A stretch of DNA of 64,000 nucleotides from positions 29,822,001 to 29,886,000 of the forward strand of contig NC_091291.1 in assembly GCF_032444005.1 (NCBI RefSeq), given 5' to 3'. Numbering within the stretch: position 1 is the first letter of the stretch; every line of letters starts with the position of its first letter. The position numbers and the translations under genes are program-made. Of the stretch, positions 1-48,783 are shown one piece after another. Under the pieces are notes generated by a model, which was given only the letters and a program-made list of their open reading frames with translations, made no database searches and had not been told where the DNA came from. This DNA comes from Ranitomeya imitator. Taxonomy: Eukaryota.

Positions 1-3000
1 GTCCTCTCTCTCCTGTAGAGTGTAAGCTCTTATGGTCAGCGGAGTCCTCTCTCTCCTGTAGAGTGTAAGCTCTTATGGTCAGCGGGGTCCTCTCTCTCCT
101 GTAGAGTGTAAGCTCTTATGGTCAGCGGAGTCCTCTCTCTCCTGTAGAGTGTAAGCTCTTATGGTCAGTAGGGTCCTCTCTCTCCTGTAGAGTGTAAGCT
201 CTTATGGTCAGTGGGGTCCTCTCTCTCCTGTAGAGTGTAAGCTCTTATGGTCAGTGGGGTCCTCTCTCTCCTGTAGAGTGTAAGCTCTTATGGTCAGTGG
301 GGTCCTCTCTCTCCTGTAGAGTGTAAGCTCTTATGGTCAGTGGGGTCTTCTCTCTCCTGTAGAGTGTAAGCTCTTATGGTCAGTGGGGTCCTCTCTCTCC
401 TGTAGAGTGTAAGCTCTTATGGTCAGTGGGGTCCTCTCTCTCTCCTGTAGAGTGTAAGCTCTTATGGTCAGTGGGGTCCTCTCTCTCTCCTGTAGAGTGT
501 AAGCTCTTATGGTCAGTGGGGTCCTCTCTCTCCTGTAGAGTGTAAGATCTTATGGTCAGTGGGGTCTTCTCTCTCCTGTAGAGTGTAAGCTCTTATGGTC
601 AGCGGGGTCCTCTCTCCTGTAGAGTGTAAGCTCTTATGATCAGTGGGTCCTCTCTCTCCTGTAGAGTGTAAGCTCTTATGATCAGTGGGGTCCTCTCTCT
701 CCTGTAGAGTGTAAGCTCTTATGATCAGTGGGGTCCTCTCTCTCCTGTAGAGTGTAAGCTCTTATGATCAGTGGGTCCTCTCTCTCCTGTAGAGTGTAAG
801 CTCTTATGGTCAGTGGGGTCCTCTCTCTCTCCTGTAGAGTGTAAGCTCTTATGGTCAGTGGGGTCCTCTCTCTCTCCTGTAGAGTGTAAGCTCTTATGAT
901 CAGTGGGTCCTCTCTCTCCTGTAGAGTGTAAGCTCTTATGGTCAGTGGGGTCCTCTCTCTCCTGTAGAGTGTAAGCTCTTATGGTCAGTGGGGTCTTCTC
1001 TCTCCTGTAGAGTGTAAGCTCTTATGGTCAGTGGGGTCCTCTCTCTCTCCTGTAGAGTGTAAGCTCTTATGGTCAGTGGGGTCTTCTCTCTCCTGTAGAG
1101 TGTAAGCTCTTATGGTCAGTGGGGTCCTCTCTCTCTCCTGTAGAGTGTAAGCTCTTATGGTCAGTGGGGTCCTCTCTCTCCTGTAGAGTGTAAGCTCTTA
1201 TGGTCAGCAGGGTTTTCTCTCTCCTGTAGAGTGTAAGCTCTTATGGTCAGTGGGGTCCTCTCTCTCCTGTAGAGTGTAAGCTCTTATGGTCAGTGGGGTC
1301 TTCTCTCTCCTGTAGAGTGTAAGCTCTTATGATCAGTGGGGTCCTCTCTCTCCTGTAGAGTGTAAGCTCTTATGATCAGTGGGGTCCTCTCTCTCCTGTA
1401 GTGTAAGCTCTTATGGTCAGTGGGGTCCTCTCTCTCCTGTAGAGTGTAAGATCTTATGGTCAGTGGGGTCTTCTCTCTCCTGTAGAGTGTAAGCTCTTAT
1501 GATCAGTGGGGTCCTCTCTCTCCTGTAGAGTGTAAGCTCTTATGATCAGTGGGGTCCTCTCTCTCCTGTAGAGTGTAAGCTCTTATGGTCAGTGGGGTCT
1601 TCTCTCTCCTGTAGAGTGTAAGTTCTTATGGTCAGTGGGGTCTTCTCTCTCCTGTAGAGTGTAAGTTCTTATGGTCAGTGGGGTCTTCTCTCTCCTGTAG
1701 AGTGTAAGCTCTTATGATCAGTGGGGTCCTCTCTCTCCTGTAGAGTGTAAGCTCTTATGGTCAGTGGGGTCCTCTCTCTCTCCTGTAGAGTGTAAGCTCT
1801 TATGGTCAGTGGGGTCCTCTCTCTCCTGTAGAGTGTAAGCTCTTATGATCAGTGGGGTCCTCTCTCTCCTGTAGAGTGTAAGCTCTTATGGTCAGTGGGG
1901 TCCTCTCTCTCCTGTAGAGTGTAAGCTCTTATGATTAGTGGGGTCTTCTCTCTCCTGTAGAGTGTAAGCTCTTATGGTCAGTGGGGTCCTCTCTCTCCTG
2001 TAGAGTGTAAGCTCTTATGGTCAGTGTGGTCCTCTCTCTCTCCTGTAGAGTGTAAGCTCTTATGGTCAGTGGGGTCCTCTCTCTCCTGTAGAGTGTAAGC
2101 TCTTATGGTCAGTGGGGTCTTCTCTCTCCTGTAGAGTGTAAGCTCTTATGATCAGTGGGGTCTTCTCTCTCCTGTAGAGTGTAAGATCTTATGATCAGTG
2201 GGGTCCTCTCTCTCTCTCCTGTAGAGTGTAAGCTCTTATGGTCAGTGTGGTCCTCTCTCTCCTGTAGAGTGTAAGCTCTTATGGTCAGTGGGGTCCTCTC
2301 TCTTCTGTAGAGTGTAAGCTCTTATGGTCAGTGGGGTCCTCTCTCTCCTGTAGAGTGTAAGCTCTTATGGTCAGTGGGGTCCTCTCTCTCTCCTGTAGAG
2401 TGTAAGCTCTTATGGTCAGTGTGGTCCTCTCTCTCCTGTAGAGTGTAAGCTCTTATGGTCAGTGGGGTCCTCTCTCTCCTGTAGAGTGTAAGCTCTTATG
2501 GTCAGTGGGGTCCTCTCTCTCCTGTAGAGTGTAAGCTCTTATGGTCAGTGGGGTCTTCTCTCTCCTGTAGAGTATAAGCTCTTATGGTCAGTGGGGTCCT
2601 CTCTCTCCTGTAGAGTATAAGTTCTTATGGTCAGTGGGGTCCTCTCTCTCTCTCCTGTAGAGTGTAAGCTCTTATGGTCAGTGGGGTCCTCTCTCTCCTG
2701 TAGAGTGTAAGCTCTTATGGTCAGTGGGGTCCTCTCTCTCTCCTGTAGAGTATAAGCTCTTATGGTCAGTGGGGTCCTCTCTCTCCTGTAGAGTGTAAGC
2801 TCTTATGGTCAGCGGGGTCCTCTCTGTCCTGTAGAGTGTAAGCTCTTATGGTCAGCGGGGTCCTCTCTGTCCTGTAGAGTGTAAGCTCTTATGGTCAGTG
2901 GGGTCCTCTCTCTCCTGTAGAGTGTAAGCTCTTATGGTCAGTGGGGTCTTCTCTCTCCTGTAGAGTGTAAGCTCTTATGGTCAGTGGGGTCTTCTCTCTC

Positions 3001-5563
3001 CTGTAGAGTGTAAGCTCTTATGGTCAGTGGGGTCCTCTCTCTCTCCTGTAGAGTGTAAGCTCTTATGGTCAGTGGGGTCCTCTCTCTCTCCTGTAGAGTG
3101 TAAGCTCTTATGGTCAGTGGGGTCCTCTCTCTCCTGTAGAGTGTAAGCTCTTATGGTCAGTGGGGTCCTCTCTCTCCTGTAGAGTGTAAGCTCTTATGGT
3201 CAGTGGGGTCTTCTCTCTCCTGTAGAGTGTAAGCTCTTATGGTCAGTGGGGTCCTCTCTCTCTCCTGTAGAGTGTAAGCTCTTATGGTCAGTGGGGTCCT
3301 CTCTCTCTCCTGTAGAGTGTAAGCTCTTATGGTCAGTGGGGTCCTCTCTCTCCTGTAGAGTGTAAGCTCTTATGGTCAGTGGGGTCCTCTCTCTCTCCTG
3401 TAGAGTGTAAGCTCTTATGGTCAGTGGGGTCTTCTCTCTCCTGTAGAGTGTAAGCTCTTATGGTCAGTGGGGTCTTCTCTCTCCTGTAGAGTGTAAGCTC
3501 TTATGGTCAGTGGGGGTCCTCTCTCTCCTGTAGAGTGTAAGCTCTTATGGTCAGTGGGGTCTTCTCTCTCATGTAGAGTGTAAGCTCTTATGGTCAGTGG
3601 GGTCTTCTCTCTCATGTAGAGTGTAAGCTCTTATGGTCAGTGGGGTCTTCTCTCTCCTGTAGAGTGTAAGCTCTTATGGTCAGTGGGGGTCCTCTCTCTC
3701 CTGTAGAGTGTAAGCTTTTATGGTCAGTGGGGGTCCTCTCTCTCCTGTAGAGTGTAAGCTCTTATGGTCAGTGGGGTCTTGTCTCTCATGTAGAGTGTAA
3801 GCTCTTATGGTCAGTGGGGTCTTCTCTCTCCTGTAGAGTGTAAGCTCTTATGGTCAGTGGGGTCCTCTCTCTCTCCTGTAGAGTGTAAGCTCTTATGGTC
3901 AGTGGGGTCTTCTCTCTCATGTAGAGTGTAAGCTCTTATGGTCAGTGGGGTCCTCTCTCTCCTGTAGAGTGTAAGCTCTTATGGTCAGTGGGGTCTTCTC
4001 TCTCCTGTAGAGTGTAAGCTCTTATGATCAGTGGGGTCCTCTCTCTCTCCTGTAGAGTGTAAGCTCTTATGGTCAGTGGGGTCTTCTCTCTCATGTAGAG
4101 TGTAAGCTCTTATGGTCAGTGGGGTCTTCTCTCTCCTGTAGAGTGTAAGCTCTTATGGTCAGTGGGGTCCTCTCTCTCCTGTAGAGTGTAAGCTCTTATG
4201 GTCAGTGGGGTCTTCTCTCTCCTGTAGAGTGTAAGCTCTTATGGTCAGTAGGGTCCTCTCTCTCCTGTAGAGTGTAAGCTCTTATGGTCAGTGGGGGTCC
4301 TCTCTCTCCTGTAGAGTGTAAGCTCTTATGGTCAGTGGGGGTCCTCTCTCTCCTGTAGAGTGTAAGCTCTTATGGTCAGTGGGGGTCCTCTCTCTCCTGT
4401 AGAGTGTAAGCTCTTATGGTCAGTGGGGTCTTCTCTCTCCTGTAGAGTGTAAGCTCTTATGGTCAGTGGGGTCCTCTCTCTCTCCTGTAGAGTGTAAGAT
4501 CTTATGGTCAGTGGGGTCCTCTCTCTCCTGTATAGTGTAAGCTCTTATGGTCAGTGGGGTCTTCTCTCTCATGTAGAGTGTAAGCTCTTATGGTCAGTGG
4601 GGTCCTCTCTCTCCTGTAGAGTGTAAGCTCTTATGGTCAGTGGGGTCTTCTCTCTCCTGTAGAGTGTAAGCTCTTATGATCAGTGGGGTCCTCTCTCTCT
4701 CCTGTAGAGTGTAAGCTCTTATGGTCAGTGGGGTCTTCTCTCTCATGTAGAGTGTAAGCTCTTATGGTCAGTGGGGTCTTCTCTCTCCTGTAGAGTGTAA
4801 GCTCTTATGGTCAGTGGGGTCCTCTCTCTCCTGTAGAGTGTAAGGTCTTATGGTCAGTGGGGTCTTCTCTCTCCTGTAGAGTGTAAGCTCTTATGGTCAG
4901 TGGGGTCTTCTCTCTCCTGTAGAGTGTAAGCTCTTATGGTCAGTGGGGTCCTCTCTCTCCTGTAGAGTGTAAGCTCTTATGGTCAGTGGGGTCTTCTCTC
5001 TCCTGTAGAGTGTAAGCTCTTATGGTCAGTGGGGTCCTCTCCCTCCTGTAGAGTGTAAGCTCTTATGGTCAGCGGGGTCCTCTCTCTCCTGTAGAGTGTT
5101 AGCTCTTATGGTCAGTGGGGTCCTCTCTCTCCTGTAGAGTGTAAGCTCTTATGGTCAGTGGGGTCCTCTCTCTCCTGTAGAGTGTAAGCTCTTATGGTCA
5201 GTGGGGTCCTCTCTCTCCTGTAGAGTGTAAGCTCTTATGGTCAGTGGGGTCCTCTCTCTTCTGTAGAGTGTAAGCTCTTATGATCAGTGGGGTCCTCTCT
5301 CTCCTGTAGAGAGTAAGCTCTTATGATCAGTGGGGTCCTCTCTCTCTCCTGTAGAGTGTAAGCTCTTATGATCAGTGGGGTCCTCTATCTCCTGTAGAGT
5401 GTAAGCTCTTATGGTCAGTGGGGTCTTCTCTCTCCTGTAGAGTGTAAGCTCTTATGGTCAGTGGGTCCTCTATCTCCTGTAGAGTGTAAGCTCTTATGAT
5501 CAGTGGGGTCCTCTCTCTCCTGTAGAGAGTAAGCTCTTATGGTCAGTAGGGTCCTCTCTCTCC
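1..5563. repeat. Tandem minisatellite/satellite, ~43-bp unit (GTCCTCTCTCTCCTGTAGAGTGTAAGCTCTTATGGTCAGTGGG), roughly 125-130 copies, runs off the left edge
   Basis: Unit directly visible; length varies 41-47 bp through the (CT)n tract. Confidence 0.98.
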
Positions 5564-6059: not shown

Positions 6060-6290
6060 CTGGTGACCCGCCCCTGTCCGGCGCGTCTACACCCACACAA
6101 GACAGGCAGAAACACGTGGTCGTGTCAACGTGGCGAGCACTGACCAATGGGAAGCAAGAGCTCAGTCCAGAACTTTCTCTGACCACGCCTCTCTAGGGCG
6201 TTCCGATATTCTAATTTGCTTAGGACCCGCCCTTTCCACGCCTACTTGCTGCGAGCATTTTAAAGGGACCGCGCAGCTGAGACACAGATG
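6060..6290 (+). promoter_or_regulatory. Probable rcn3 promoter (CpG-rich; GC boxes, CCAAT box, TATA-like element)
   Basis: CCCGCCC at 6067 and 6226, CCAAT at 6144, TTTAAA at ~6259, ACGTGG/CCACG cores at 6113, 6128, 6183 and 6236; lies just upstream of a candidate non-coding exon. Confidence 0.6.
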
Positions 6291-6331
6291 CAAACTGCGA
6301 TCACTGGCAGAGGCTGGAGGAGCAGCACGAG
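6290..6331 (+). other. rcn3: Predicted non-coding exon 1 of rcn3 (5' end approximate)
   Basis: Donor GAG|GTAAAG at 6331/6332. The first coding exon is preceded by an acceptor 6 nt before the ATG, so an upstream UTR exon is required. Confidence 0.55.
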
Positions 6332-6404
6332 GTAAAGCGGCGGGTGCGGGGGGACCATCAGCTGCAGGAACGGACTCCATCCCGTGCACTCTGCTGTGCT
6401 CTCC

Positions 6405-8815
6405 CAGCATCCCCCACAGCTCTGGGCATGGCAGAACCACAACTCCCAGCATCCCCCATACACTGGGCATGGCAGAACTACATCTCCCAGCATCCCCCAT
6501 ACACTGGGCATGGCAGAACTACATCTCCCAGCATCCCCCATACACTGGGCATGGCAGGACTACATCTCCCAGCATCCCCCACAGCTCTGGGCATGGCAGG
6601 ACTACATCTCCCAGCATCCCCCACAGCTCTGGGCATGGCAGAACTACATCTCCCAGCATCCCCCACAGCTCTGGGCATGGCAGAACTACATCTCCCAGCA
6701 TCCCCCACAGCTCTGGGCATGGCAGAACCACAACTCCCAGCATCCCCCATACACTGGGCATGGCAGAACTACATCTCCCAGCATCCCCCATACACTGGGC
6801 ATGGCAGAACTACATCTCCCAGCATCCCCCCATACACTGGGCATGGCAGAACTACATCTCCCAGCATCCCCCACAGCTCTGGGCATGGCAGAACCACAAC
6901 TCCCAGCATCCCCCATACACTGGGCATGGCAGAACTACATCTCCCAGCATCCCCCACAGCTCTGGGCATGGCAGAACTACATCTCCCAGCATCCCCCACA
7001 GCTCTGGGCATGGCAGAACCACAACTCCCAGCATCCCCCATACACTGGGCATGGCAGAACTACATCTCCCAGCATCCCCCATACACTGGGCATGGCAGAA
7101 CTACATCTCCCAGCATCCCCCACAGCTTTGGGCATGGCAGAACCACAACTCCCAGCATCCCCCATACACTGGGCATGGCAGAACCACAACTCCCAGCATC
7201 CCCCATACACTGGGCATGGCAGAACTACATCTCCCAGCATCCCCCATACACTGGGCATGGCAGAACTACATCTCCCAGCATCCCCCCATACACTGGGCAT
7301 GGCAGAACTACATCTCCCAGCATCCCCCACAGCTCTGGGCATGGCAGAACTACATCTCCCAGCATCCCCCATACACTGGGCATGGCAGAACTACATCTCC
7401 CAGCATCCCCCACAGCTCTGGGCATGGCAGAACCACAACTCCCAGCATCCCCCATACACTGGGCATGGCAGAACTACAACTCCCAGCATCCCCCACAGCT
7501 CTGGGCATGGCAGAACCACAACTCCCAGCATCCCCCACAGCTCTGGGCATGGCAGAACCACAACTCCCAGCATCCCCCATACACTGGGCATGGCAGAACT
7601 ACAACTCCCAGCATCCCCCACAGCTCTGGGCATGGCAGAACTACATCTCCCAGCATCCCCCACAGCTCTGGGCATGGCAGAACCACAACTCCCAGCATCC
7701 CCCATACACTGGGCATGGCAGAACTACAACTCCCAGCATCCCCCACAGCTCTGGGCATGGCAGAACTACATCTCCCAGCATCCCCCACAGCTCTGGGCAT
7801 GGCAGAACCACAACTCCCAGCATCCCCCACAGCTCTGGGCATGGCAGAACTACATCTCCCAGCATCCCCCACAGCTCTGGGCATGGCAGAACTACATCTC
7901 CCAGCATCCCCCACAGCTCTGGGCATGGCAGAACTACATCTCCCAGCATCCCCCACAGCTCTGGGCATGGCAGAACCACAACTCCCAGCATCCCCCATAC
8001 ACTGGGCATGGCAGAACTACATCTCCCAGCATCCCCCATACACTGGGCATGGCAGAACTACATCTCCCAGCATCCCCCACAGCTCTGGCCATGGCAGAAC
8101 CACAACTCCCAGCATCCCCCATACACTGGGCATGGCAGAACTACATCTCCCAGCATCCCCCACAGCTCTGGGCATGGCAGAACTACATCTCCCAGCATCC
8201 CCCACAGCTCTGGGCATGGCAGAACCACAACTCCCAGCATCCCCCATACACTGGGCATGGCAGAACTACAACTCCCAGCATCCCCCATAGCTTTGGGCAT
8301 GGCAGAACTACATCTCCCAACATCCCCCATACACTGGGCATGGCAGAACTACAACTCCCAGCATCCCCCACAGCTCTGGGCATGGCAGAACCACAACTCC
8401 CAGCATCCCCCATACACTGGGCATGGCAGAACTACATCTCCCAACATCCCCCATAGCTCTGGGCATGGCAGAACTACATCTCCCAGCATCCCCCATACAC
8501 TGGGCATGGCAGAACTACATCTCCCAGCATCCCCCCATACACTGGGCATGGCAGAACTACAACTCCCAGCATCCCCCATAGCTCTGGGCATAGCAGGACT
8601 ACATCTCCCAGCATCCCCCATAGCTCTGGGCATAGCAGGACTACAACTCCCAGCATCCCCCATAGCTCTGGACCTTGCAGAACTACAACTCCCAGCTTAT
8701 CCTGTAGCTCTTGACCTTGCAGAACTACAATTCCCAGCCCGTCCTGTAGCTCTGGACGTGCCCTGCATCTCCCTTATGCTTTGTTGTGTCAGGACTACAG
8801 CTCCCAGCATGCTCT
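6405..8815. repeat. Tandem minisatellite, mixed 41/42-bp units (CTCCCAGCATCCCCCA[CAGCT/TACA]CTGGGCATGGCAGAAC[C/T]ACA[A/T]), ~55 copies, in predicted rcn3 intron 1
   Basis: Directly visible; degenerates toward 8650-8815. It accounts for all the repetitive ORFs from 6130 to 8663. Confidence 0.97.
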
Positions 8816-8862
8816 GTAGAGGCGGGTGGGCGCGCAGTGACTTTTGGCTTTTGCAGGGCAGA

Positions 8863-9104
8863 ATGATGCGGGCGCGCTGCTGCTGCGTCTTCTCCGTTCT
8901 CCTCGCTCTGGGGGTTTGCGCCTTGCTGGTGACGTCCAAACCGGCCCAGGAGAAGAAAGACCGCGTCCACCACGGCAAGGACCTGAGCGAGCACGCGCAC
9001 GACGACAGCAAGGACTTCCAGTACGACCACGAAGCCTTTCTGGGCAAAGAAGAGGCCAAGACGTTTGATCAGCTCACCCCCGAGGAAAGCCAGGAGCGGC
9101 TGGG
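8863..9104 (+). CDS. rcn3: rcn3 first coding exon (signal peptide + pro region)
   Basis: Acceptor TTTTGCAG ends at 8856, ATG at 8863, donor GG|GTAAGA; [27 protein letters not shown]...ERLG. Confidence 0.95.
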
Positions 9105-12100
9105 GTAAGAGCGCCACGGCTAACCCTCCCGTACTACAACTCCCAGCATGCTTGGCCATGTTCGGAGGGTTGTGCTGTAGCCTGATCGGACCATGCACAT
9201 ATACCATGGGTGTCAGCTGTCACATGCACAGGATTTAGGCGACCCCCCCCCCCCCCATCCACGCCTGTGCCCCATAGTGCTGACTTTCTTTTAGGGTCCC
9301 GTTCTAATACATAGAATTAGGAAGTTACCGATTCCAGACTTTAAAGGTCACATAAATCCCCTAAAGTTGTGACCCTCCAAACATTGGGGCTCAGTCTGCA
9401 AAGAAACGCCCGGTGTCCAGTGTGGGTGTACAGGGTGGATGGCTGACACTCCCACAGAGGAGCGCTCCCCACCGTATCCCACCCACAGAAAGCCTGGAGG
9501 GGCCGGGAACATTCCAGGCTGTTAACGTGGCAGGATCCAGATTTTTTTTTTTTTTCTTGAGGTAGGAGGGATAAGAATGGGAAACCGTGTCTGGCCCCTT
9601 GTAAGGATGCAGAAGACTCTCGGCACCAAAGTCCGCTCCGCCAGCGCTGATCGCTGCCGTTCTGGATTGCAATGCACTTCCACATTCTTCTCCCCCCGGG
9701 TGCGTGGACAGCAGTGAGGCTGCCGGGACCGGTCGCTTCTGACCCATTTTCTGACCCATAGAAAATTTTAAAAAAAGTCTGCTTTTGTATTTGATCCTCC
9801 TTTTCCCTCCAGGCATGGACATTTTGGTTTAGATGGCCCCTTTCTCATGGTTTGGGGTCTATGAGCAGGTACTTGCTCTGGAGGACCCCGACCATCAGTG
9901 TTGCAAGAAAAGTCGCTCCGTATAGTCATGTAATACAGGACCGGGATATGCAACGTAAAGGTCGACTAGCATGGGTCTGTGGTCAGGTGAGGGTCTGCAC
10001 CATCGGTACAGATGCCATGTTAACGCTTCACAAACTTTGCAGATCTATCAACATCAAGATTTATCAGTGGGTAAACCAGACCCCCCAAAATTAAGGCCCA
10101 CACAAAAATTAACTCTGACCCAAGCCAGACCCCTAAAATGAATGGGACCCAAGACCAGTTTCCCTAAATCAAATGAATGGGACCCAAGACCAGTTTCCTT
10201 AAATCAAATGAATGGGACCCAAGACCAGTTTCCCTAAATCAAATGAATGGGACCCAAGACCAGTTTCCTTAAATCAAATGAATGGGACCCAAGACCAGTT
10301 TCCCTAAATCAAATGAATGGGACCCAAGACCAGTTTCCCTAAATCAAATGAATGGGACCCAAGACCAGTTTCCCTAAATCAAATGAATGGGACCCAAGAC
10401 CAGTTTCCCTAAATCAAATGAATGGGACCCAAGACCAGTTTCCCTAAATCAAATGAATGGGACCCAAGACCAGTTTCCCTAAATCAAATGAATGGGACCC
10501 AAGACCAGTTTCCCTAAATCAAATGAATGGGACCCAAGACCAGTTTCCCTAAAATAAAATGGGACCCAAGACCAGTTCCCCTAAAATGAATGAATGGGAC
10601 CCAAGACAAGGTTCCCCTAAACTCATTCAAACCTCAGTGCAGACACAAAAATGAACTCTGACCCAAGACCAGCCCCCTAAACTAAGTCCGACTCCTAGCA
10701 AGACCTAGACTAAATCCCTCTAAAATGACTAAGACCCCTTAACTTAAATGCGACCTTCCCGGTTCTGCTGCGCACAAGCTCTGAGCTGTGACCAGTCCAC
10801 GATCTTGTGTGCCAGACCTCCATACCCCATGCTTCTATGATGGAAGGTGTGAGGGGTCCGGATAGCGGAGCAGCCCCTGATCTAACGCTTGCTGTGTTAC
10901 TGACCGGCGCAGGACACGGCGCTCCGACATTAATCTCTCCAGTTTTTGGTTTGTTGCAGGAAGATAGTTGATAAGATTGACAGTAATAATGACTCCTATG
11001 TCACAGCGCCGGAGCTCTTGGCCTGGATGAAGTTTGTGCACGGGCGCTTTGTTTCCGAGGATGTGGATAAGCAGGTGCTGCTGTGTGATAAGAACCGTGA
11101 CGGATCGGTGTCTTGGGAGGAGTACTCCAAACAGACGTACTCCCATCCCATAGGTACGGCCCTGGTGCAATCTCCGCTTAATCGTTGTTTGTTTCCTTTC
11201 TGTCTCCTGCAGGAAGATAGTAGATAAGATAGACAAGAATAAAGATGGCTTCATTACTGGCGAGGAGCTGAAAAATTGGATCACGCACTCCCAGAACCGA
11301 TACATCTATGACAATGTGAATAAGCACTGGGCAGATTACGATAAGGACAAGGACAATGCCATCTCCTGGGAGGAGTACAAGAACACCACGTATGGGTATG
11401 CCGCAGGTAAGGGGGTGAGAGCATGGCCTGTCGGAGGGGAGGGCCCCTGTCAAACTGCCGCTTCTTAAAGACCACCTAAATGTTCTCCAGAAAAGCCCGG
11501 CGTCTCCCTGCCAGGTGTCCGAACTAATCAGACTCGGGTTGGATACTATGGCCGACCCCCACCGGATAGGTGAGGACTAAATGTGTGGGGTCTGACCACT
11601 GGGACTCGCTCAACTTAAGGATTCTTGTAGTGAGCATACTCTGCCATCACCAAAACTGCCGTGGTCACATGCTCACTGCCATTCCCAAAGACCCACAGAA
11701 GTGGAAAAAAACTCCTAATTTCCCCTTTCCCAAAGCATTATTTCCATGATCACAGTTTAGGAGCGCACTGCTCCCCTGCCTCCTGCTTGTTCGGGAGAGG
11801 GTGCGCTCCTGATGATTGACAGTTCGAACAAAGCTACCTTGTGCAGCAAGCAGGGGCAGCTCTACCTGTGCAGCATCTAGCGAGCAGTCATGGCGTTCAT
11901 TGCCCAGGAAGCCGACCACCTCTTATAGACTGCAGCGCTGGCCGGTAACCTACACACCCTTTACAATTACAAGTCTTGGGAACGGAGAGGGTAAATTGCA
12001 AAGTTGCTCGTTTCTACAATTTTACCCCTTAAAATGGGAGTATAATGTCCTCTGTGTGAATGGAGCAGCTCTCTTGTGGCAGCGCCAACAAATTACATGT

Positions 12101-13907
12101 CTTTATAAGCGGTTTGCATCGCTTTCACCCATATCGATGGCACATTGGCTTTCTTGGCGGTCTCGGGTGCAGTTTGGGGGCACAGTGCTGGCTCCGGGCA
12201 GGATTATGCTTTCATTCCCTTATTGTGCATGCTCTGGTGGAGTAATAAAATACGGAATAGATAAAAGTTTAGGAACAAAACTGTCCCGGCCGCAGGGGGT
12301 GGACATGACACCGGGATTAAGAGCGAATGTGTCATGTCCGACCCCCCCCCCCTAAGGCCCTGCACCGTTTTGGTGTCGACACCGTGAATTTCTTGGTTTG
12401 ATCAATGTTAAAACCAAGCGAAGACAAGTAACGTCCGTCTCTCGTCCTTCTCAGGAGAAGTCGAGTTCTACGACATTCCCGATAAAGAAACCTACAGGAA
12501 GATGATGAAACGCGACGAGAGACGATTCAAGCAAGCCGACAAAAATGGCGACCTGATCGCCACCAGGGAGGAGTTCACGGCGTTCCTGCACCCGGAAGAG
12601 TTTGACTATATGCAAGACCTCGTGGTCACGGTAAGACTCCGGCGTTCATGGTGATATTCCCATCTCTCACGGTGGGGGAAGGGGTTCAGGATGTTGTCGT
12701 TGTTCATTTCTAAACTTTACCTTACTGGCTTTTGTAGGAAACCATCGAGGACATCGATAAAAACGGAGACGGTTCAGTGGATGTTGACGAATACATTGGT
12801 GAGTTATATTATTAAAACACCTGGGCTTCATAAAGGGGGTCTTCCTTCTGGCTGTTAAAGATTGGGTCATTTACTCTGAAGAACCCTCCCAATAGAAAAC
12901 CTGTTTTTCATCAGGACAGCTTTGATGGAGAAAAATAGTTTAAGGACAATCATGTCCTTAATATTGACTTTCGCCCCTCTTTAGGCGACATGTTCACTCC
13001 TGAAGCCGAAGAACCTGAGCCCGAATGGGTTAAAACAGAGCGCCAGCAATTCAAAGATCACCGCGACCTAAATAAGGACGGAAAGTTGGACCGGTCCGAG
13101 ATCAGCCACTGGATCCATCCACATGACTATGACCACGCAGACCTGGAAGCCAAGCATCTCATCTACGAGTCTGATAAAGACAAGGTAAGCGGTCGCGTAA
13201 GGAGGAAACCCGACGATCATCCAAAGTCCATAGAAGAAGAAGAAGCCCCTTTTAGCAACTTAAACTTTCCAAAAAAAAACAATATCTTCCCATTCCACAT
13301 ATTCCTCTGCATTGATGTTTCAGGAAATAATTACAGAACCGCTGTCAGACACAGCCAGACTCCACAAAGAAAAGGCAGAAACTGCTTAGAACCACTCCTG
13401 CCTTCCGGATTTCTGAGCGAGTGCCACATGCACAGTGTCAGGTTGTAACTTGCCTTTCCTCTTCCGGACACAGCCATCATATGATTGTCTGGAGGAGAGA
13501 ACAAGGACTTATCAAGCCCAGATCGGCTCTGCAGTGCAGAAAGGAGGCAGAATTTGCCCTGTAATGAGGTAGTGGCAGCAAAAGTGGATGACTCTTCACG
13601 AAAGCCTCATGCACATGCTGCCTGAAACCATCATCTCTGCAAAAAAGTCAGTGCAGATTTTGGAATCCGTCTCATTATAACTTCTGCTGCAGAGTCCGAA
13701 CTCTATGGGGAAAATGTAAGACTAGCGCCCCCCAGTGGCCAAAAAGTGAATGCATAAAGGAGTAGTGTTTGTAGATATATTTGTATTTATTTTTTTTAGG
13801 ATGACAAACTGACCAAGAAAGAAATCCTGGACAACTGGAACATGTTTGTGGGCAGTCAGGCGACAAACTACGGTGAAGATCTGACGAGGCGGCATGATGA
13901 ATTTTAG
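8863..13907 (+). CDS. rcn3: Reticulocalbin-3 (CREC-family multi-EF-hand ER protein), 326 aa
   Basis: join(8863..9104, 10960..11153 OR 11213..11406, 12455..12630, 12738..12798, 12985..13184, 13800..13907) = 981 nt, all GT-AG and in phase. It has a signal peptide, [43 protein letters not shown] and [18 protein letters not shown], and is adjacent to nosip as in human. Confidence 0.92.
10141..10620. repeat. 35-bp tandem repeat (AATGGGACCCAAGACCAGTTTCCCTAAATCAAATG), ~13 copies, rcn3 intron 2
   Basis: Directly visible. Confidence 0.95.
10960..11153 (+). CDS. rcn3: rcn3 alternative exon 3a (EF-hands 1-2, divergent version)
   Basis: TTGTTGCAG| acceptor, G|GTACGG donor, 194 nt, open frame [64 protein letters not shown]. 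Confidence 0.8.
11213..11406 (+). CDS. rcn3: rcn3 alternative exon 3b (EF-hands 1-2, canonical-like version)
   Basis: TCTCCTGCAG| acceptor, G|GTAAGG donor, 194 nt, [64 protein letters not shown]. Confidence 0.93.
12455..12630 (+). CDS. rcn3: rcn3 exon 4
   Basis: [58 protein letters not shown]; AG/GT boundaries. Confidence 0.95.
12738..12798 (+). CDS. rcn3: rcn3 exon 5 (61 nt)
   Basis: [20 protein letters not shown]; TTTGTAG acceptor, GTGAGT donor. Confidence 0.95.
12985..13184 (+). CDS. rcn3: rcn3 exon 6 (200 nt)
   Basis: [42 protein letters not shown]...ESDKDK; GTAAGC donor. Confidence 0.95.
13800..13907 (+). CDS. rcn3: rcn3 last coding exon
   Basis: [35 protein letters not shown]. Confidence 0.95.

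Positions 13908-25187: not shown

Positions 25188-48783
<23,596 letters not shown>

What the first reader, a model, noticed from the sequence alone, without database searches (positions are those of the whole stretch)
10960..11406. Duplicated, mutually exclusive exon 3 in frog rcn3 that maps one-to-one onto calumenin's two alternative exons
Seen: two tandem exons, each exactly 194 nt, with the same phase (2 to 1), the same start (G AAG ATA GT. GAT AAG AT.), open frames and GT-AG sites. Including both or neither shifts the frame. Recalled, to verify: human CALU has a mutually exclusive 194-nt exon pair, with one variant reading ..WIKFAQKRWIYEDVERQW..DLNEDGLVSWEEY and the other ..WIKHAQKKYIYDNVENQW. 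I know only one such exon in mammalian RCN3/RCN1. Here exon 3a carries the KF / EDV / Q / DG.VSWEEY signature and exon 3b carries the H.Q..YIYDNV signature. Inference: the exon duplication predates the CALU/RCN3 gene split and was kept in amphibians, giving an unrecognised second RCN3 isoform with swapped EF-hands 1-2.
Basis: partly seen in the sequence, partly recalled or inferred. Interest (0 to 1): 0.85.

Follow-up and report, generated by a model that had tools for sequence, protein, structure and literature searches.

The report
Alternative EF-hand exon pair in frog rcn3
The poison frog's reticulocalbin-3 gene has two tandem 194-base copies of one exon, used one at a time to give two versions of its first calcium-binding module; the pair is real and at least as old as jawed vertebrates, public gene models already include it, and its link to calumenin's similar pair is likely but unproven.

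Summary
Window 10960-11153 (3a) and 11213-11406 (3b) are two 194-nt, same-phase, GT-AG-flanked exons 59 nt apart. The gene is Ranitomeya imitator rcn3, shown by a gene tree and by NOSIP next door.

Exon 3a is functional. dN/dS against another frog is 0.10. It forms one strongly supported clade across sharks, coelacanth, lungfish, salamanders and more than 20 frogs. Annotated isoform pairs in 10 gene copies (9 species) differ only in this exon.

Using both exons gives a stop codon 7 nt into 3b. Using neither gives a stop at codon 91. The 50-79 nt intervening intron is probably too short to be spliced out.

- "Unrecognised" is wrong: RefSeq XP_069598323.1 of this species is the 3a isoform, and Xenopus tropicalis NP_989389.1 ("calumenin precursor") is too.
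- "Kept in amphibians" is too narrow. The pair is ancestral to jawed vertebrates. 3a is absent from the alligator, bowfin and sawfish loci that I read.

The one-to-one match to calumenin's pair is the best tree (93/84). It vanishes when one column (Trp/Tyr at position 30) is removed, and the data do not reject independent duplication. I found no paper describing the RCN3 pair. Interest is moderate.

The parts
6288..6332 (+). Upstream coding start used by the RefSeq X2 model (15 extra residues ahead of the conserved Met-Met-Arg start). It is probably 5' exon 1, and its coding use is doubtful.
   Evidence: The first 15 residues of P0154 map here. Other frog RCN3 proteins start at the exon-2 Met.
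6400..8738 (.). 42-nt minisatellite (56 copies) filling most of intron 1. It is not coding.
   Evidence: Tandem Repeats Finder. It creates the spurious 992-aa ORF listed.
8862..9104 (+). rcn3 exon 2: start codon at 8863, signal peptide and acidic N-terminal region. It ends in phase 2 (GG|G).
   Evidence: It is 100% identical to P0154.
10960..11153 (+). Exon 3a, 194 nt, the alternative EF-hand 1-2 module. The EF1 loop has Ser instead of Gly at loop position 6. The EF2 loop is canonical. The donor TAG|GTACGG is weaker than that of 3b.
   Evidence: It is present spliced in XP_069598323.1. dN/dS is 0.10 against Mixophyes.
11154..11212 (+). 59-nt intron between 3a and 3b, with a candidate branch point TTAAT about 28 nt from the donor. 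It is too short for a donor and a branch point to be engaged together.
   Evidence: Sequence. Homologous introns are about 50 nt in Rana (inferred from ORF P0002), 60 nt in Mixophyes, about 79 nt in X. tropicalis and 69 nt in the shark Heptranchias. The ~50-nt steric threshold is taken from PMC7969005.
11213..11406 (+). Exon 3b, 194 nt, the EF-hand 1-2 module shared with all other vertebrate RCN3 and closest to the RCN1 exon 3. It has a strong donor, CAG|GTAAGG.
   Evidence: The 3b isoform is 322/326 identical to R. variabilis X1.
12455..12630 (+). Exon 4 (EF-hand 3).
12738..12798 (+). Exon 5 (EF-hand 4 loop).
12985..13184 (+). Exon 6 (EF-hand 5 and the start of 6).
13800..13907 (+). Last coding exon, ending RRHDEF and a stop codon.
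25191..28492 (-). Exons of the neighbouring gene NOSIP, tail to tail with rcn3. This is the synteny marker for the RCN3 locus.
   Evidence: The ORF pieces 27582-27839 and 25191-25568 match PDB 8c6j chain CN 'Nitric oxide synthase-interacting protein' at 1.7e-23 and 2.8e-20. Rcn3-Nosip linkage in shark, frog and lizard is described in PMC3554528.

Best explanation
Exons 3a and 3b are a mutually exclusive homologous exon pair of the reticulocalbin-3 gene. Each encodes a complete alternative EF-hand 1-2 pair (64 residues, 41% identical). The gene therefore makes two 326-residue ER/secretory Ca2+-binding proteins that differ only in that module.

Shown here:
- Both exons are intact and under purifying selection.
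- Annotated isoforms contain one or the other.
- Joint inclusion or joint skipping shifts the frame into an early stop. The conserved exon start G AAG ATA G reads as TAG when entered from 3a.
- The pair, with 3a upstream and an intervening intron of only 50-79 nt, is conserved from sharks to frogs.

Inferred:
- The intron is too short for U1 at the 3a donor and U2 at a branch point to assemble together, so 3a cannot be spliced to 3b. This is the mechanism accepted for tropomyosin and OGDH and is compatible with CALU's 73-nt intron. Nonsense-mediated decay removes any leak-through.
- The weaker 3a donor and the Gly-to-Ser/Thr change in its first Ca2+ loop suggest that 3a is the regulated, lower-affinity variant in amphibians.

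Evolution: the RCN3 pair existed in the last common ancestor of jawed vertebrates. 3a is absent from the three loci I could read in amniotes (alligator), ray-finned fishes (bowfin) and batoids (sawfish). I put about 0.6 on the pair descending from the same single duplication as calumenin's pair, before the CALU/(RCN1+RCN3) gene split, with RCN1 losing the A-type copy. That step is inferred, not shown.
For: Anatomy and frame.

Gene identity: in a tree without the exon-3 columns, RCN3 is a clade at 96/87*, RCN1 at 100/99*, and RCN1+RCN3 stand against CALU at 100/100*. Frogs have a separate RCN1. NOSIP is adjacent.

Use of 3a: P0154 (XP_069598323.1) contains the exact 2-3a-4 splice product. Isoform pairs are identical outside exon 3 in Ascaphus, Discoglossus, Leptobrachium, Pelodytes, Pelobates, X. 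tropicalis, X. laevis L and S, Dendropsophus and Pleurodeles. X. tropicalis NP_989389.1 is the 3a form and X. laevis MGC80480 is the 3b form.

Selection: dN/dS is 0.10 for 3a and 0.06 for 3b, Ranitomeya against Mixophyes. The 64-codon frame is intact in every species seen.

Age: the 3a clade scores 100/99* and 99/94* and includes two sharks, coelacanth and lungfish. The shark locus L006 has 3a, a 69-nt intron, then 3b.

Short intron elsewhere.

Losses: 3b alone is present in Alligator L004, Amia L007 and Pristis L001.

Link to CALU: the ML tree groups 3a with CALU-A and 3b with RCN1 and CALU-B. The order and the tiny intron match those of CALU.
Against: - No RNA-seq junction counts could be examined. 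Expression of 3a in this species rests on a RefSeq model, and in Xenopus on an NP_ record.
- Steric exclusion is inferred from intron length alone. Branch points were picked by eye. The 79-nt Xenopus intron is near the limit, and ultra-short introns can sometimes be spliced.
- The CALU link is weak. Support is never starred. The AU test does not reject 3a+3b (p 0.34 and 0.43). The grouping is lost when column 30 is removed, and 3a+3b is then marginally better. At consensus level only 2 sites favour the A/B partition, against 1 for the gene partition and 1 for the crossed partition.
- 3a sits on a long stem branch (0.83), so its placement is inherently unstable.
- RCN1 shows no A-type isoform in 119 proteins, and there is no relic in the elephant-shark locus.
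Confidence: 0.85

Rival explanations
1. Parallel origin. Exon 3 was tandemly duplicated twice, once in RCN3 after it split from RCN1 and once in CALU. The shared Trp-30, the exon order and the tiny intron are then convergent, with the intron kept short in both genes by the same selection for exclusivity.
For: The AU test does not reject a 3a+3b clade (p 0.34, 0.43). Without column 30 that tree is as good or slightly better. No A-type exon or relic is found in RCN1. Counting events, two gains equal one gain plus one loss.
Against: The ML tree with all columns groups 3a with CALU-A in two taxon sets. 3b groups with RCN1 to the exclusion of 3a at 86/84. Both pairs must then have arisen in the short interval before the jawed-vertebrate crown. 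Exon loss is commoner than repeated identical duplication, and three lineages lacking 3a were found here.
Confidence: 0.38
2. Exon 3a is a decaying or unused duplicate that gene predictors include only because its frame happens to be open.
For: 3a evolves faster than 3b: 51/64 against 55/64 identity between two neobatrachians, and it is very divergent in Xenopus. Its donor is weaker and its first Ca2+ loop lacks the usual Gly. No read-level data were seen here.
Against: dN/dS is 0.10. The 64-codon frame and splice sites are intact from sharks to frogs. Ca2+-ligand positions are kept in both loops. X. tropicalis has an NP_ record of the 3a form. Where 3a is absent (alligator, bowfin, sawfish) no trace of it remains, so an unused copy does not persist.
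Confidence: 0.02
3. The gene is really calumenin (or rcn1), so the pair is simply the known CALU pair.
For: NCBI names the products 'calumenin-like', 'calumenin-B-like' or 'reticulocalbin-1-like' in several frogs. The protein ends in HDEF like calumenin.
Against: The gene tree places it in RCN3 at 96/87*, apart from CALU and from frog RCN1. NOSIP is the neighbour, as in other vertebrate RCN3 loci (PMC3554528). HDEF is shared by all amphibian RCN3 proteins examined.
Confidence: 0.01

Closest known systems
CALU (calumenin) mutually exclusive homologous exons 3a/3b, also called 3/4, giving calumenin-1 and calumenin-2/crocalbin (Abascal et al. 2015, PMC4494069; PMC7969005)
   Same: It is the same exon of a paralogous CREC gene, with the same 194-nt length and phases. 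It is a tandem pair with an intervening intron of about 58-73 nt. The Trp-30 type lies upstream and the Tyr-30 type downstream. Each copy encodes the EF-hand 1-2 pair. It is also ancient, dated to jawed vertebrates.
   Different: It is a different gene: RCN3, sister to RCN1 and linked to NOSIP. 3a is far more divergent than CALU-A (41% identical to 3b, on a long branch) and lacks the loop Gly in amphibians. 3a is absent from the amniote and ray-finned-fish RCN3 loci examined, whereas mammals and birds keep the CALU pair, and teleosts split that pair between calua and calub. Orthology of the two pairs is not demonstrated.
Steric-hindrance mutually exclusive exons (alpha-tropomyosin exons 2/3; OGDH exons 4a/4b, PMC7969005)
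   Same: The intervening intron is so short, or the branch point so close to the upstream donor (under about 50 nt), that the two exons cannot be joined. Frame incompatibility and decay act as a back-up.
   Different: No branch-point mapping or minigene data exist for rcn3. Here the whole intron is 59 nt, rather than a longer intron with a distant branch point.
Mammalian RCN3 (single exon 3; ER chaperone-like Ca2+-binding protein ending in HDEL)
   Same: It is the orthologous gene with the same exon-intron plan and six EF-hands. Frog exon 3b is the counterpart of the single exon 3 seen in all amniote RCN3 proteins examined here.
   Different: The frog gene keeps the second exon 3a and ends in HDEF rather than HDEL.

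Membership tests
Mutually exclusive homologous exon (MXE/MEHE) pair | Adjacent exons of common origin with the same length and phases | tested here: met
   194 nt each, phase 2 in and phase 1 out. They share 110/194 nt and 26/64 aa, and there is a 49-nt direct repeat at 80% identity.
Mutually exclusive homologous exon (MXE/MEHE) pair | Mature transcripts carry exactly one of the two | tested here: inconclusive
   Annotated isoform pairs differ only by this exon in 10 gene copies from 9 species. P0154 contains the exact 3a splice product. One GenBank model (P0155) wrongly fuses parts of both exons. No read-level data were available.
Mutually exclusive homologous exon (MXE/MEHE) pair | Both copies are maintained by purifying selection | tested here: met
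   dN/dS is 0.10 for 3a and 0.06 for 3b. The 3a clade spans sharks to frogs at 100/99*.
Mutually exclusive homologous exon (MXE/MEHE) pair | A mechanism that forbids joint inclusion or joint skipping | tested here: met
   Frame: including both gives TAG 7 nt into 3b, and including neither gives a stop at codon 91; both stops lie far upstream of the last junction. Intron lengths are 59 nt here and 50-79 nt in four other species. That the short intron is unspliceable is inferred, not tested.
RCN3 orthologue (CREC family) | Groups with RCN3 of other vertebrates rather than with RCN1 or CALU | tested here: met
   In a tree without the exon-3 columns, RCN3 scores 96/87*, RCN1 100/99* and RCN1+RCN3 100/100*.
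RCN3 orthologue (CREC family) | Conserved linkage to NOSIP | tested here: met
   NOSIP exons lie at 25.2-28.5 kb on the minus strand. The linkage is described in PMC3554528.
RCN3 orthologue (CREC family) | Signal peptide, six EF-hands and a C-terminal HDEL-type retrieval signal | tested here: met
   There is a hydrophobic N-terminus, and EF-hand loops occur in exons 3-6. The C-terminus is HDEF, a variant shared by all amphibian RCN3 proteins examined.
Same exon pair as CALU 3a/3b (one duplication before the gene split) | The exon tree pairs 3a with CALU-A and 3b with CALU-B | tested here: inconclusive
   This is the ML topology at 86/97.5 and 93/84, never starred. The AU test does not reject the alternative (p 0.34-0.43). 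The grouping is lost without column 30.
Same exon pair as CALU 3a/3b (one duplication before the gene split) | Same order of types and a comparably short intervening intron | tested here: met
   The Trp-30 type is upstream in RCN3 (window, L002, L003, L006) and in CALU (P0001, P0003, P0270). Introns are 50-79 nt against 58-73 nt.
Same exon pair as CALU 3a/3b (one duplication before the gene split) | Trace of the A-type copy in the third paralogue RCN1, or both types in a pre-duplication outgroup | tested here: not met
   No A-type exon is found in 119 RCN1 proteins. The Callorhinchus RCN1 locus has no relic. Cyclostome and invertebrate loci could not be fetched.

The most novel reading that the evidence does not exclude
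The exon-3 pair arose once, before the two rounds of vertebrate genome duplication separated CALU from RCN1/RCN3. That would make it older than the 'jawed vertebrate' date given for CALU. The three paralogues then record three different fates of one ancestral splicing switch: kept (CALU), lost early (RCN1), and kept in sharks, lobe-finned fishes, salamanders and frogs but absent from the amniote, ray-finned-fish and batoid loci examined (RCN3).
Probability: 0.55. Interest if true: 0.5.

Novelty: new member of a known kind. Interest (0 to 1): 0.35.

Why it matters
It adds a second CREC-family gene with the calumenin-type EF-hand exon switch. It shows that the switch is ancestral for jawed-vertebrate RCN3 and is missing from the one amniote RCN3 locus examined, which would explain why work on mammals has not met it.

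It offers a natural comparison of how one ancient alternative-exon pair is kept, split or discarded among paralogues. That is the question studied by Abascal et al. 2015 for CALU alone.

It also explains the muddled database names, where amphibian rcn3 products are called calumenin, calumenin-B-like or reticulocalbin-1-like.

For frog biology it predicts two RCN3 proteins with different Ca2+ handling in the first EF-hand pair. The practical impact is modest, because the isoforms are already in RefSeq.

Tried and rejected
- Scaffold alignment. I aligned window exon peptides to an RCN1 scaffold to make a full-length profile query. MAFFT stacked the EF-hand repeats on one another, so I abandoned it. 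Instead I queried with the long spurious ORF that runs into exon 2, restricted to the exon-2 residues, and that worked.
- Database search with the shark 3a exon as the region. It found only 2 proteins because too few exact words are shared. It says nothing about the distribution of 3a.
- Locus look-ups. Heterodontus X2, Pleurodeles X1 and Polypterus X1 are not on record. Rhinatrema and Scyliorhinus have no DNA available. Caecilian, salamander, bichir and catshark loci are therefore unchecked.
- NOSIP by Pfam. Pfam did not recognise the NOSIP exon pieces. The PDB sequence search did.
- Teleost 'calumenin-A-like' genes (P0018, P0023). Their first loop resembles that of 3a, and I suspected they were RCN3-3a descendants. 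The gene tree puts them with CALU, so I dropped the idea.
- The second Megalops rcn3 copy. Its EDVDKQ motif looked 3a-like, but it nests inside the 3b clade. Its X1 and X2 isoforms differ in the last exon, not in exon 3.
- Invertebrate outgroups in the exon tree. They attached erratically as long branches, so rooting was not attempted.
- RNA-structure control. There are no inverted repeats around the pair, so nothing suggests control by RNA structure.
Full report
**What is in the window**

- There are two 194-nt segments, each preceded by a pyrimidine tract and CAG and followed by GT.
- Both begin G AAG ATA GTn GAT AAG ATn.
- Both are open for 64 codons in the frame that joins the exon ending at 9104 to the exon starting at 12455.
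- They share 110 of 194 bases and 26 of 64 residues.
- The repeat finder reports a 49-nt direct repeat at 80% identity with a start-to-start spacing of 253 nt, which is 194 + 59.
- Each segment alone scores as an EF-hand pair in Pfam and matches CREC-family proteins at 1e-11 to 1e-23 by tblastn.

The window holds one CREC gene on the plus strand. Its coding exons are 8862-9104, 3a or 3b, 12455-12630, 12738-12798, 12985-13184 and 13800-13907. Either choice of exon 3 gives a 326-residue protein ending RRHDEF.

**Which gene and which organism**

A database search with the exon-2 peptide returned a 100% match to 'calumenin-like isoform X2 [Ranitomeya imitator]', XP_069598323.1 (P0154). NCBI names the same gene calumenin-like, calumenin-B-like, reticulocalbin-1-like or reticulocalbin-3 in different frogs, so I tested orthology directly.
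- I built a maximum-likelihood tree of 78 proteins with the exon-3 columns removed. The window's protein falls in a clade with RCN3 of sharks, lobe-finned fishes, ray-finned fishes, reptiles and other amphibians (96/87, starred).
- RCN1 is a separate clade (100/99). It includes RCN1 of the congener Ranitomeya variabilis.
- RCN1+RCN3 stand against CALU at 100/100.
- Exons of NOSIP lie tail to tail at 25.2-28.5 kb. They match PDB 8c6j chain CN at 1.7e-23 and 2.8e-20.
- Rcn3-Nosip linkage is the conserved arrangement in elephant shark, Xenopus and lizard (PMC3554528).

The gene is rcn3.

**Is exon 3a used and maintained?**

- P0154 contains the exact product of splicing 2-3a-4. The 3a isoform is therefore already a RefSeq model in this species.
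- Among the returned proteins, 3a-type isoforms are annotated in more than 20 frogs from Ascaphus to dendrobatids. They are also annotated in three salamanders, a lungfish, the coelacanth and two sharks.
- In ten gene copies from nine species the two isoforms are identical outside exon 3. These are Ascaphus, Discoglossus, Leptobrachium, Pelodytes, Pelobates, X. tropicalis, X. laevis L and S, Dendropsophus and Pleurodeles.
- X. tropicalis NP_989389.1, named 'calumenin precursor', is the 3a isoform of rcn3. X. laevis 'rcn3.L precursor / MGC80480' is the 3b isoform. NP_ records are built on deposited mRNAs (my knowledge of RefSeq practice), so this is indirect transcript evidence.
- Between Ranitomeya and Mixophyes, dN/dS is 0.10 for 3a (dS 0.90) and 0.06 for 3b.
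- In the exon tree all 3a exons form one clade at 100/99 (99/94 in a larger set), and that clade includes the sharks.
- The locus of the sevengill shark Heptranchias has 3a, a 69-nt intron, then 3b.

The RCN3 pair therefore predates the split of cartilaginous and bony vertebrates, and 3a has been under selection throughout.

**Where 3a is missing**

- The rcn3 loci of Alligator (L004), the bowfin Amia (L007, where intron 2 is only 406 nt) and the sawfish Pristis (L001) contain 3b only. No 3a-like remnant is detectable.
- Among the listed RCN3 proteins, every one from a reptile, a caecilian or a ray-finned fish has the 3b type.
- So 3a is absent from these three lineages, most simply through separate losses. 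The caecilian, bichir and catshark loci could not be read.
- 'Kept in amphibians' is thus too narrow. The pair is ancestral, and salamanders and frogs are among the keepers.

**How exclusivity works**

- Shown: including both exons puts a TAG 7 nt into 3b, because the conserved start G AAG ATA G is read as GGA AGA TAG. Including neither gives a stop at codon 91. Both stops lie hundreds of bases upstream of the last exon junction, which is the usual condition for nonsense-mediated decay.
- Shown: the intervening intron is 59 nt here and 60 nt in Mixophyes. It is about 50 nt in Rana, inferred from the read-through ORF P0002. It is about 79 nt in X. tropicalis, where the 3a donor has moved 6 nt and the exon is 200 nt. 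It is 69 nt in the shark.
- Literature: human CALU has a 73-nt intron between its pair. About 50 nt between donor and branch point is the proposed steric limit for engaging U1 and U2 together (PMC7969005).
- Inferred: in a 59-nt intron any usable branch point is under about 45 nt from the donor. A TTAAT lies at about 28 nt. 3a therefore cannot be spliced to 3b.
- Other observations: the 3a donor (TAG|GTACGG) is weaker than that of 3b (CAG|GTAAGG). No inverted repeats suggest control by RNA structure.

**What differs in the protein**

Each exon encodes the loops of EF-hands 1 and 2.
- In 3b the first loop is canonical and the second has Asn at the Gly position.
- In frog and salamander 3a the first loop keeps all liganding positions but has Ser, Thr or Lys at the Gly position. 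Sharks, coelacanth and lungfish keep Gly there. The second loop of 3a is canonical.
- A change in Ca2+ affinity of the first pair is a reasonable inference, but it is untested.

**Relation to calumenin**

CALU's pair is a known case, dated to jawed vertebrates, and RCN3 is not mentioned in that paper (PMC4494069).

Evidence for a shared origin:
- With all 64 columns, the ML exon tree puts 3a with CALU-A, and puts 3b with RCN1 and CALU-B. Support is 86/97.5 with 66 exons and 93/84 with 82 exons.
- The order of the two types matches in both genes, and so does the tiny intron.

Evidence that this is weak:
- Support never reaches the starred level.
- The AU test does not reject a 3a+3b clade (p 0.34 and 0.43).
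- When column 30 alone is removed (Trp in 3a and CALU-A, Tyr elsewhere), the grouping disappears and the 3a+3b tree is marginally better.
- At consensus level only positions 30 and 50 support the A/B partition. Position 37 supports the gene partition and position 31 the crossed one.
'KF' is shared with CALU-A only by neobatrachian frogs. The D of EDV and the Q also occur in invertebrate CREC proteins and are probably ancestral. DG.VSWEEY occurs in both CALU types.
- RCN1 shows only the B type in 112 of 119 proteins, and the other 7 lack or truncate the exon. The elephant-shark RCN1 locus has no relic.

A single duplication before the gene split, followed by loss in RCN1, is the more economical story, because loss of 3a is evidently easy. 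I put it at about 0.55-0.6. Parallel duplication remains open at about 0.4.

**Novelty**

Full-text searches for RCN3 or reticulocalbin together with mutually exclusive exons, exon duplication or Xenopus isoforms found no description of this pair. The isoforms themselves are in RefSeq, Ensembl/UniProt and GenBank. The finding is therefore a real, undescribed-in-print member of a known kind, not an unrecognised isoform. It modestly extends the known history of the calumenin exon switch.

**Limits**

- No read-level expression data were examined.
- Branch points were chosen by eye.
- Several key loci were unavailable: caecilian, salamander, bichir, coelacanth, cyclostomes and invertebrate chordates.
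- The exon alignment has only 64 columns.

Noticed in passing
window 13800-13907; proteins: Every amphibian RCN3 protein examined that uses the common last exon (frogs, salamanders, caecilians) ends RRHDEF, which is calumenin's C-terminal motif. RCN3 of sharks, lobe-finned and ray-finned fishes and reptiles ends HDEL. An amphibian-wide change in the ER-retrieval signal may affect retention versus secretion, and it probably contributes to the 'calumenin-like' names.
   Followed up: partly
L006 12777-12884 and 16224-16331; L001 13930-14040 and 15253-15357; P0300/P0301: RCN3 has a second duplicated exon pair: two alternative last exons ([19 protein letters not shown] type and NYTRFVGSA..DYGE.MMV.HDE[LF] type). 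They occur in a shark and a sawfish. Matching alternative C-termini are annotated in a newt, a gecko and teleosts. Only the first type was found in this window.
   Followed up: partly
window 1-5563 and 6400-8738: There are two large tandem arrays. One is a 43-nt satellite (128 copies, 95% matches) at the window start. The other is a 42-nt minisatellite (56 copies) filling rcn3 intron 1, and it creates a spurious 992-codon open frame running into exon 2. Similar short-period arrays recur near 29.5-30.0, 36.0-36.6, 40.4-41.2, 50.5-51.1 and 52.8-53.6 kb.
   Followed up: partly
L002 6644-6843 (X. tropicalis): The Xenopus 3a exon is 200 nt, not 194. The ancestral donor position reads GC, and a GT 6 nt downstream is used, which adds Gly-Lys. 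Xenopus 3a is also much more divergent than other frog 3a exons, on a branch of length about 1.
   Followed up: yes
P0155 (GenBank model of this locus): An older 432-residue 'unnamed protein product' of R. imitator joins all of 3a to the second half of 3b through an invented splice, and it runs past the true stop. It is a mis-prediction caused by the duplicated exons.
   Followed up: partly
window 15.6-18.5 kb, 20.0-21.6 kb (-), 37.1-38.2 kb (-), 45.1-46.2 kb (-), 54.7-55.6 kb (-): Long open frames that look like transposable-element genes lie between rcn3 and NOSIP and further downstream. They resemble a retroelement with a tyrosine-recombinase-like ORF, a reverse-transcriptase ORF and three transposase-like ORFs. 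I judged this from the translations only and did not search them.
   Followed up: no
P0018, P0023 (teleost 'calumenin-A-like'): Some teleosts have a third, fast-evolving calumenin-clade gene whose first EF-hand loop lacks the Gly, as frog 3a does. By the gene tree it belongs with CALU, not RCN3.
   Followed up: partly
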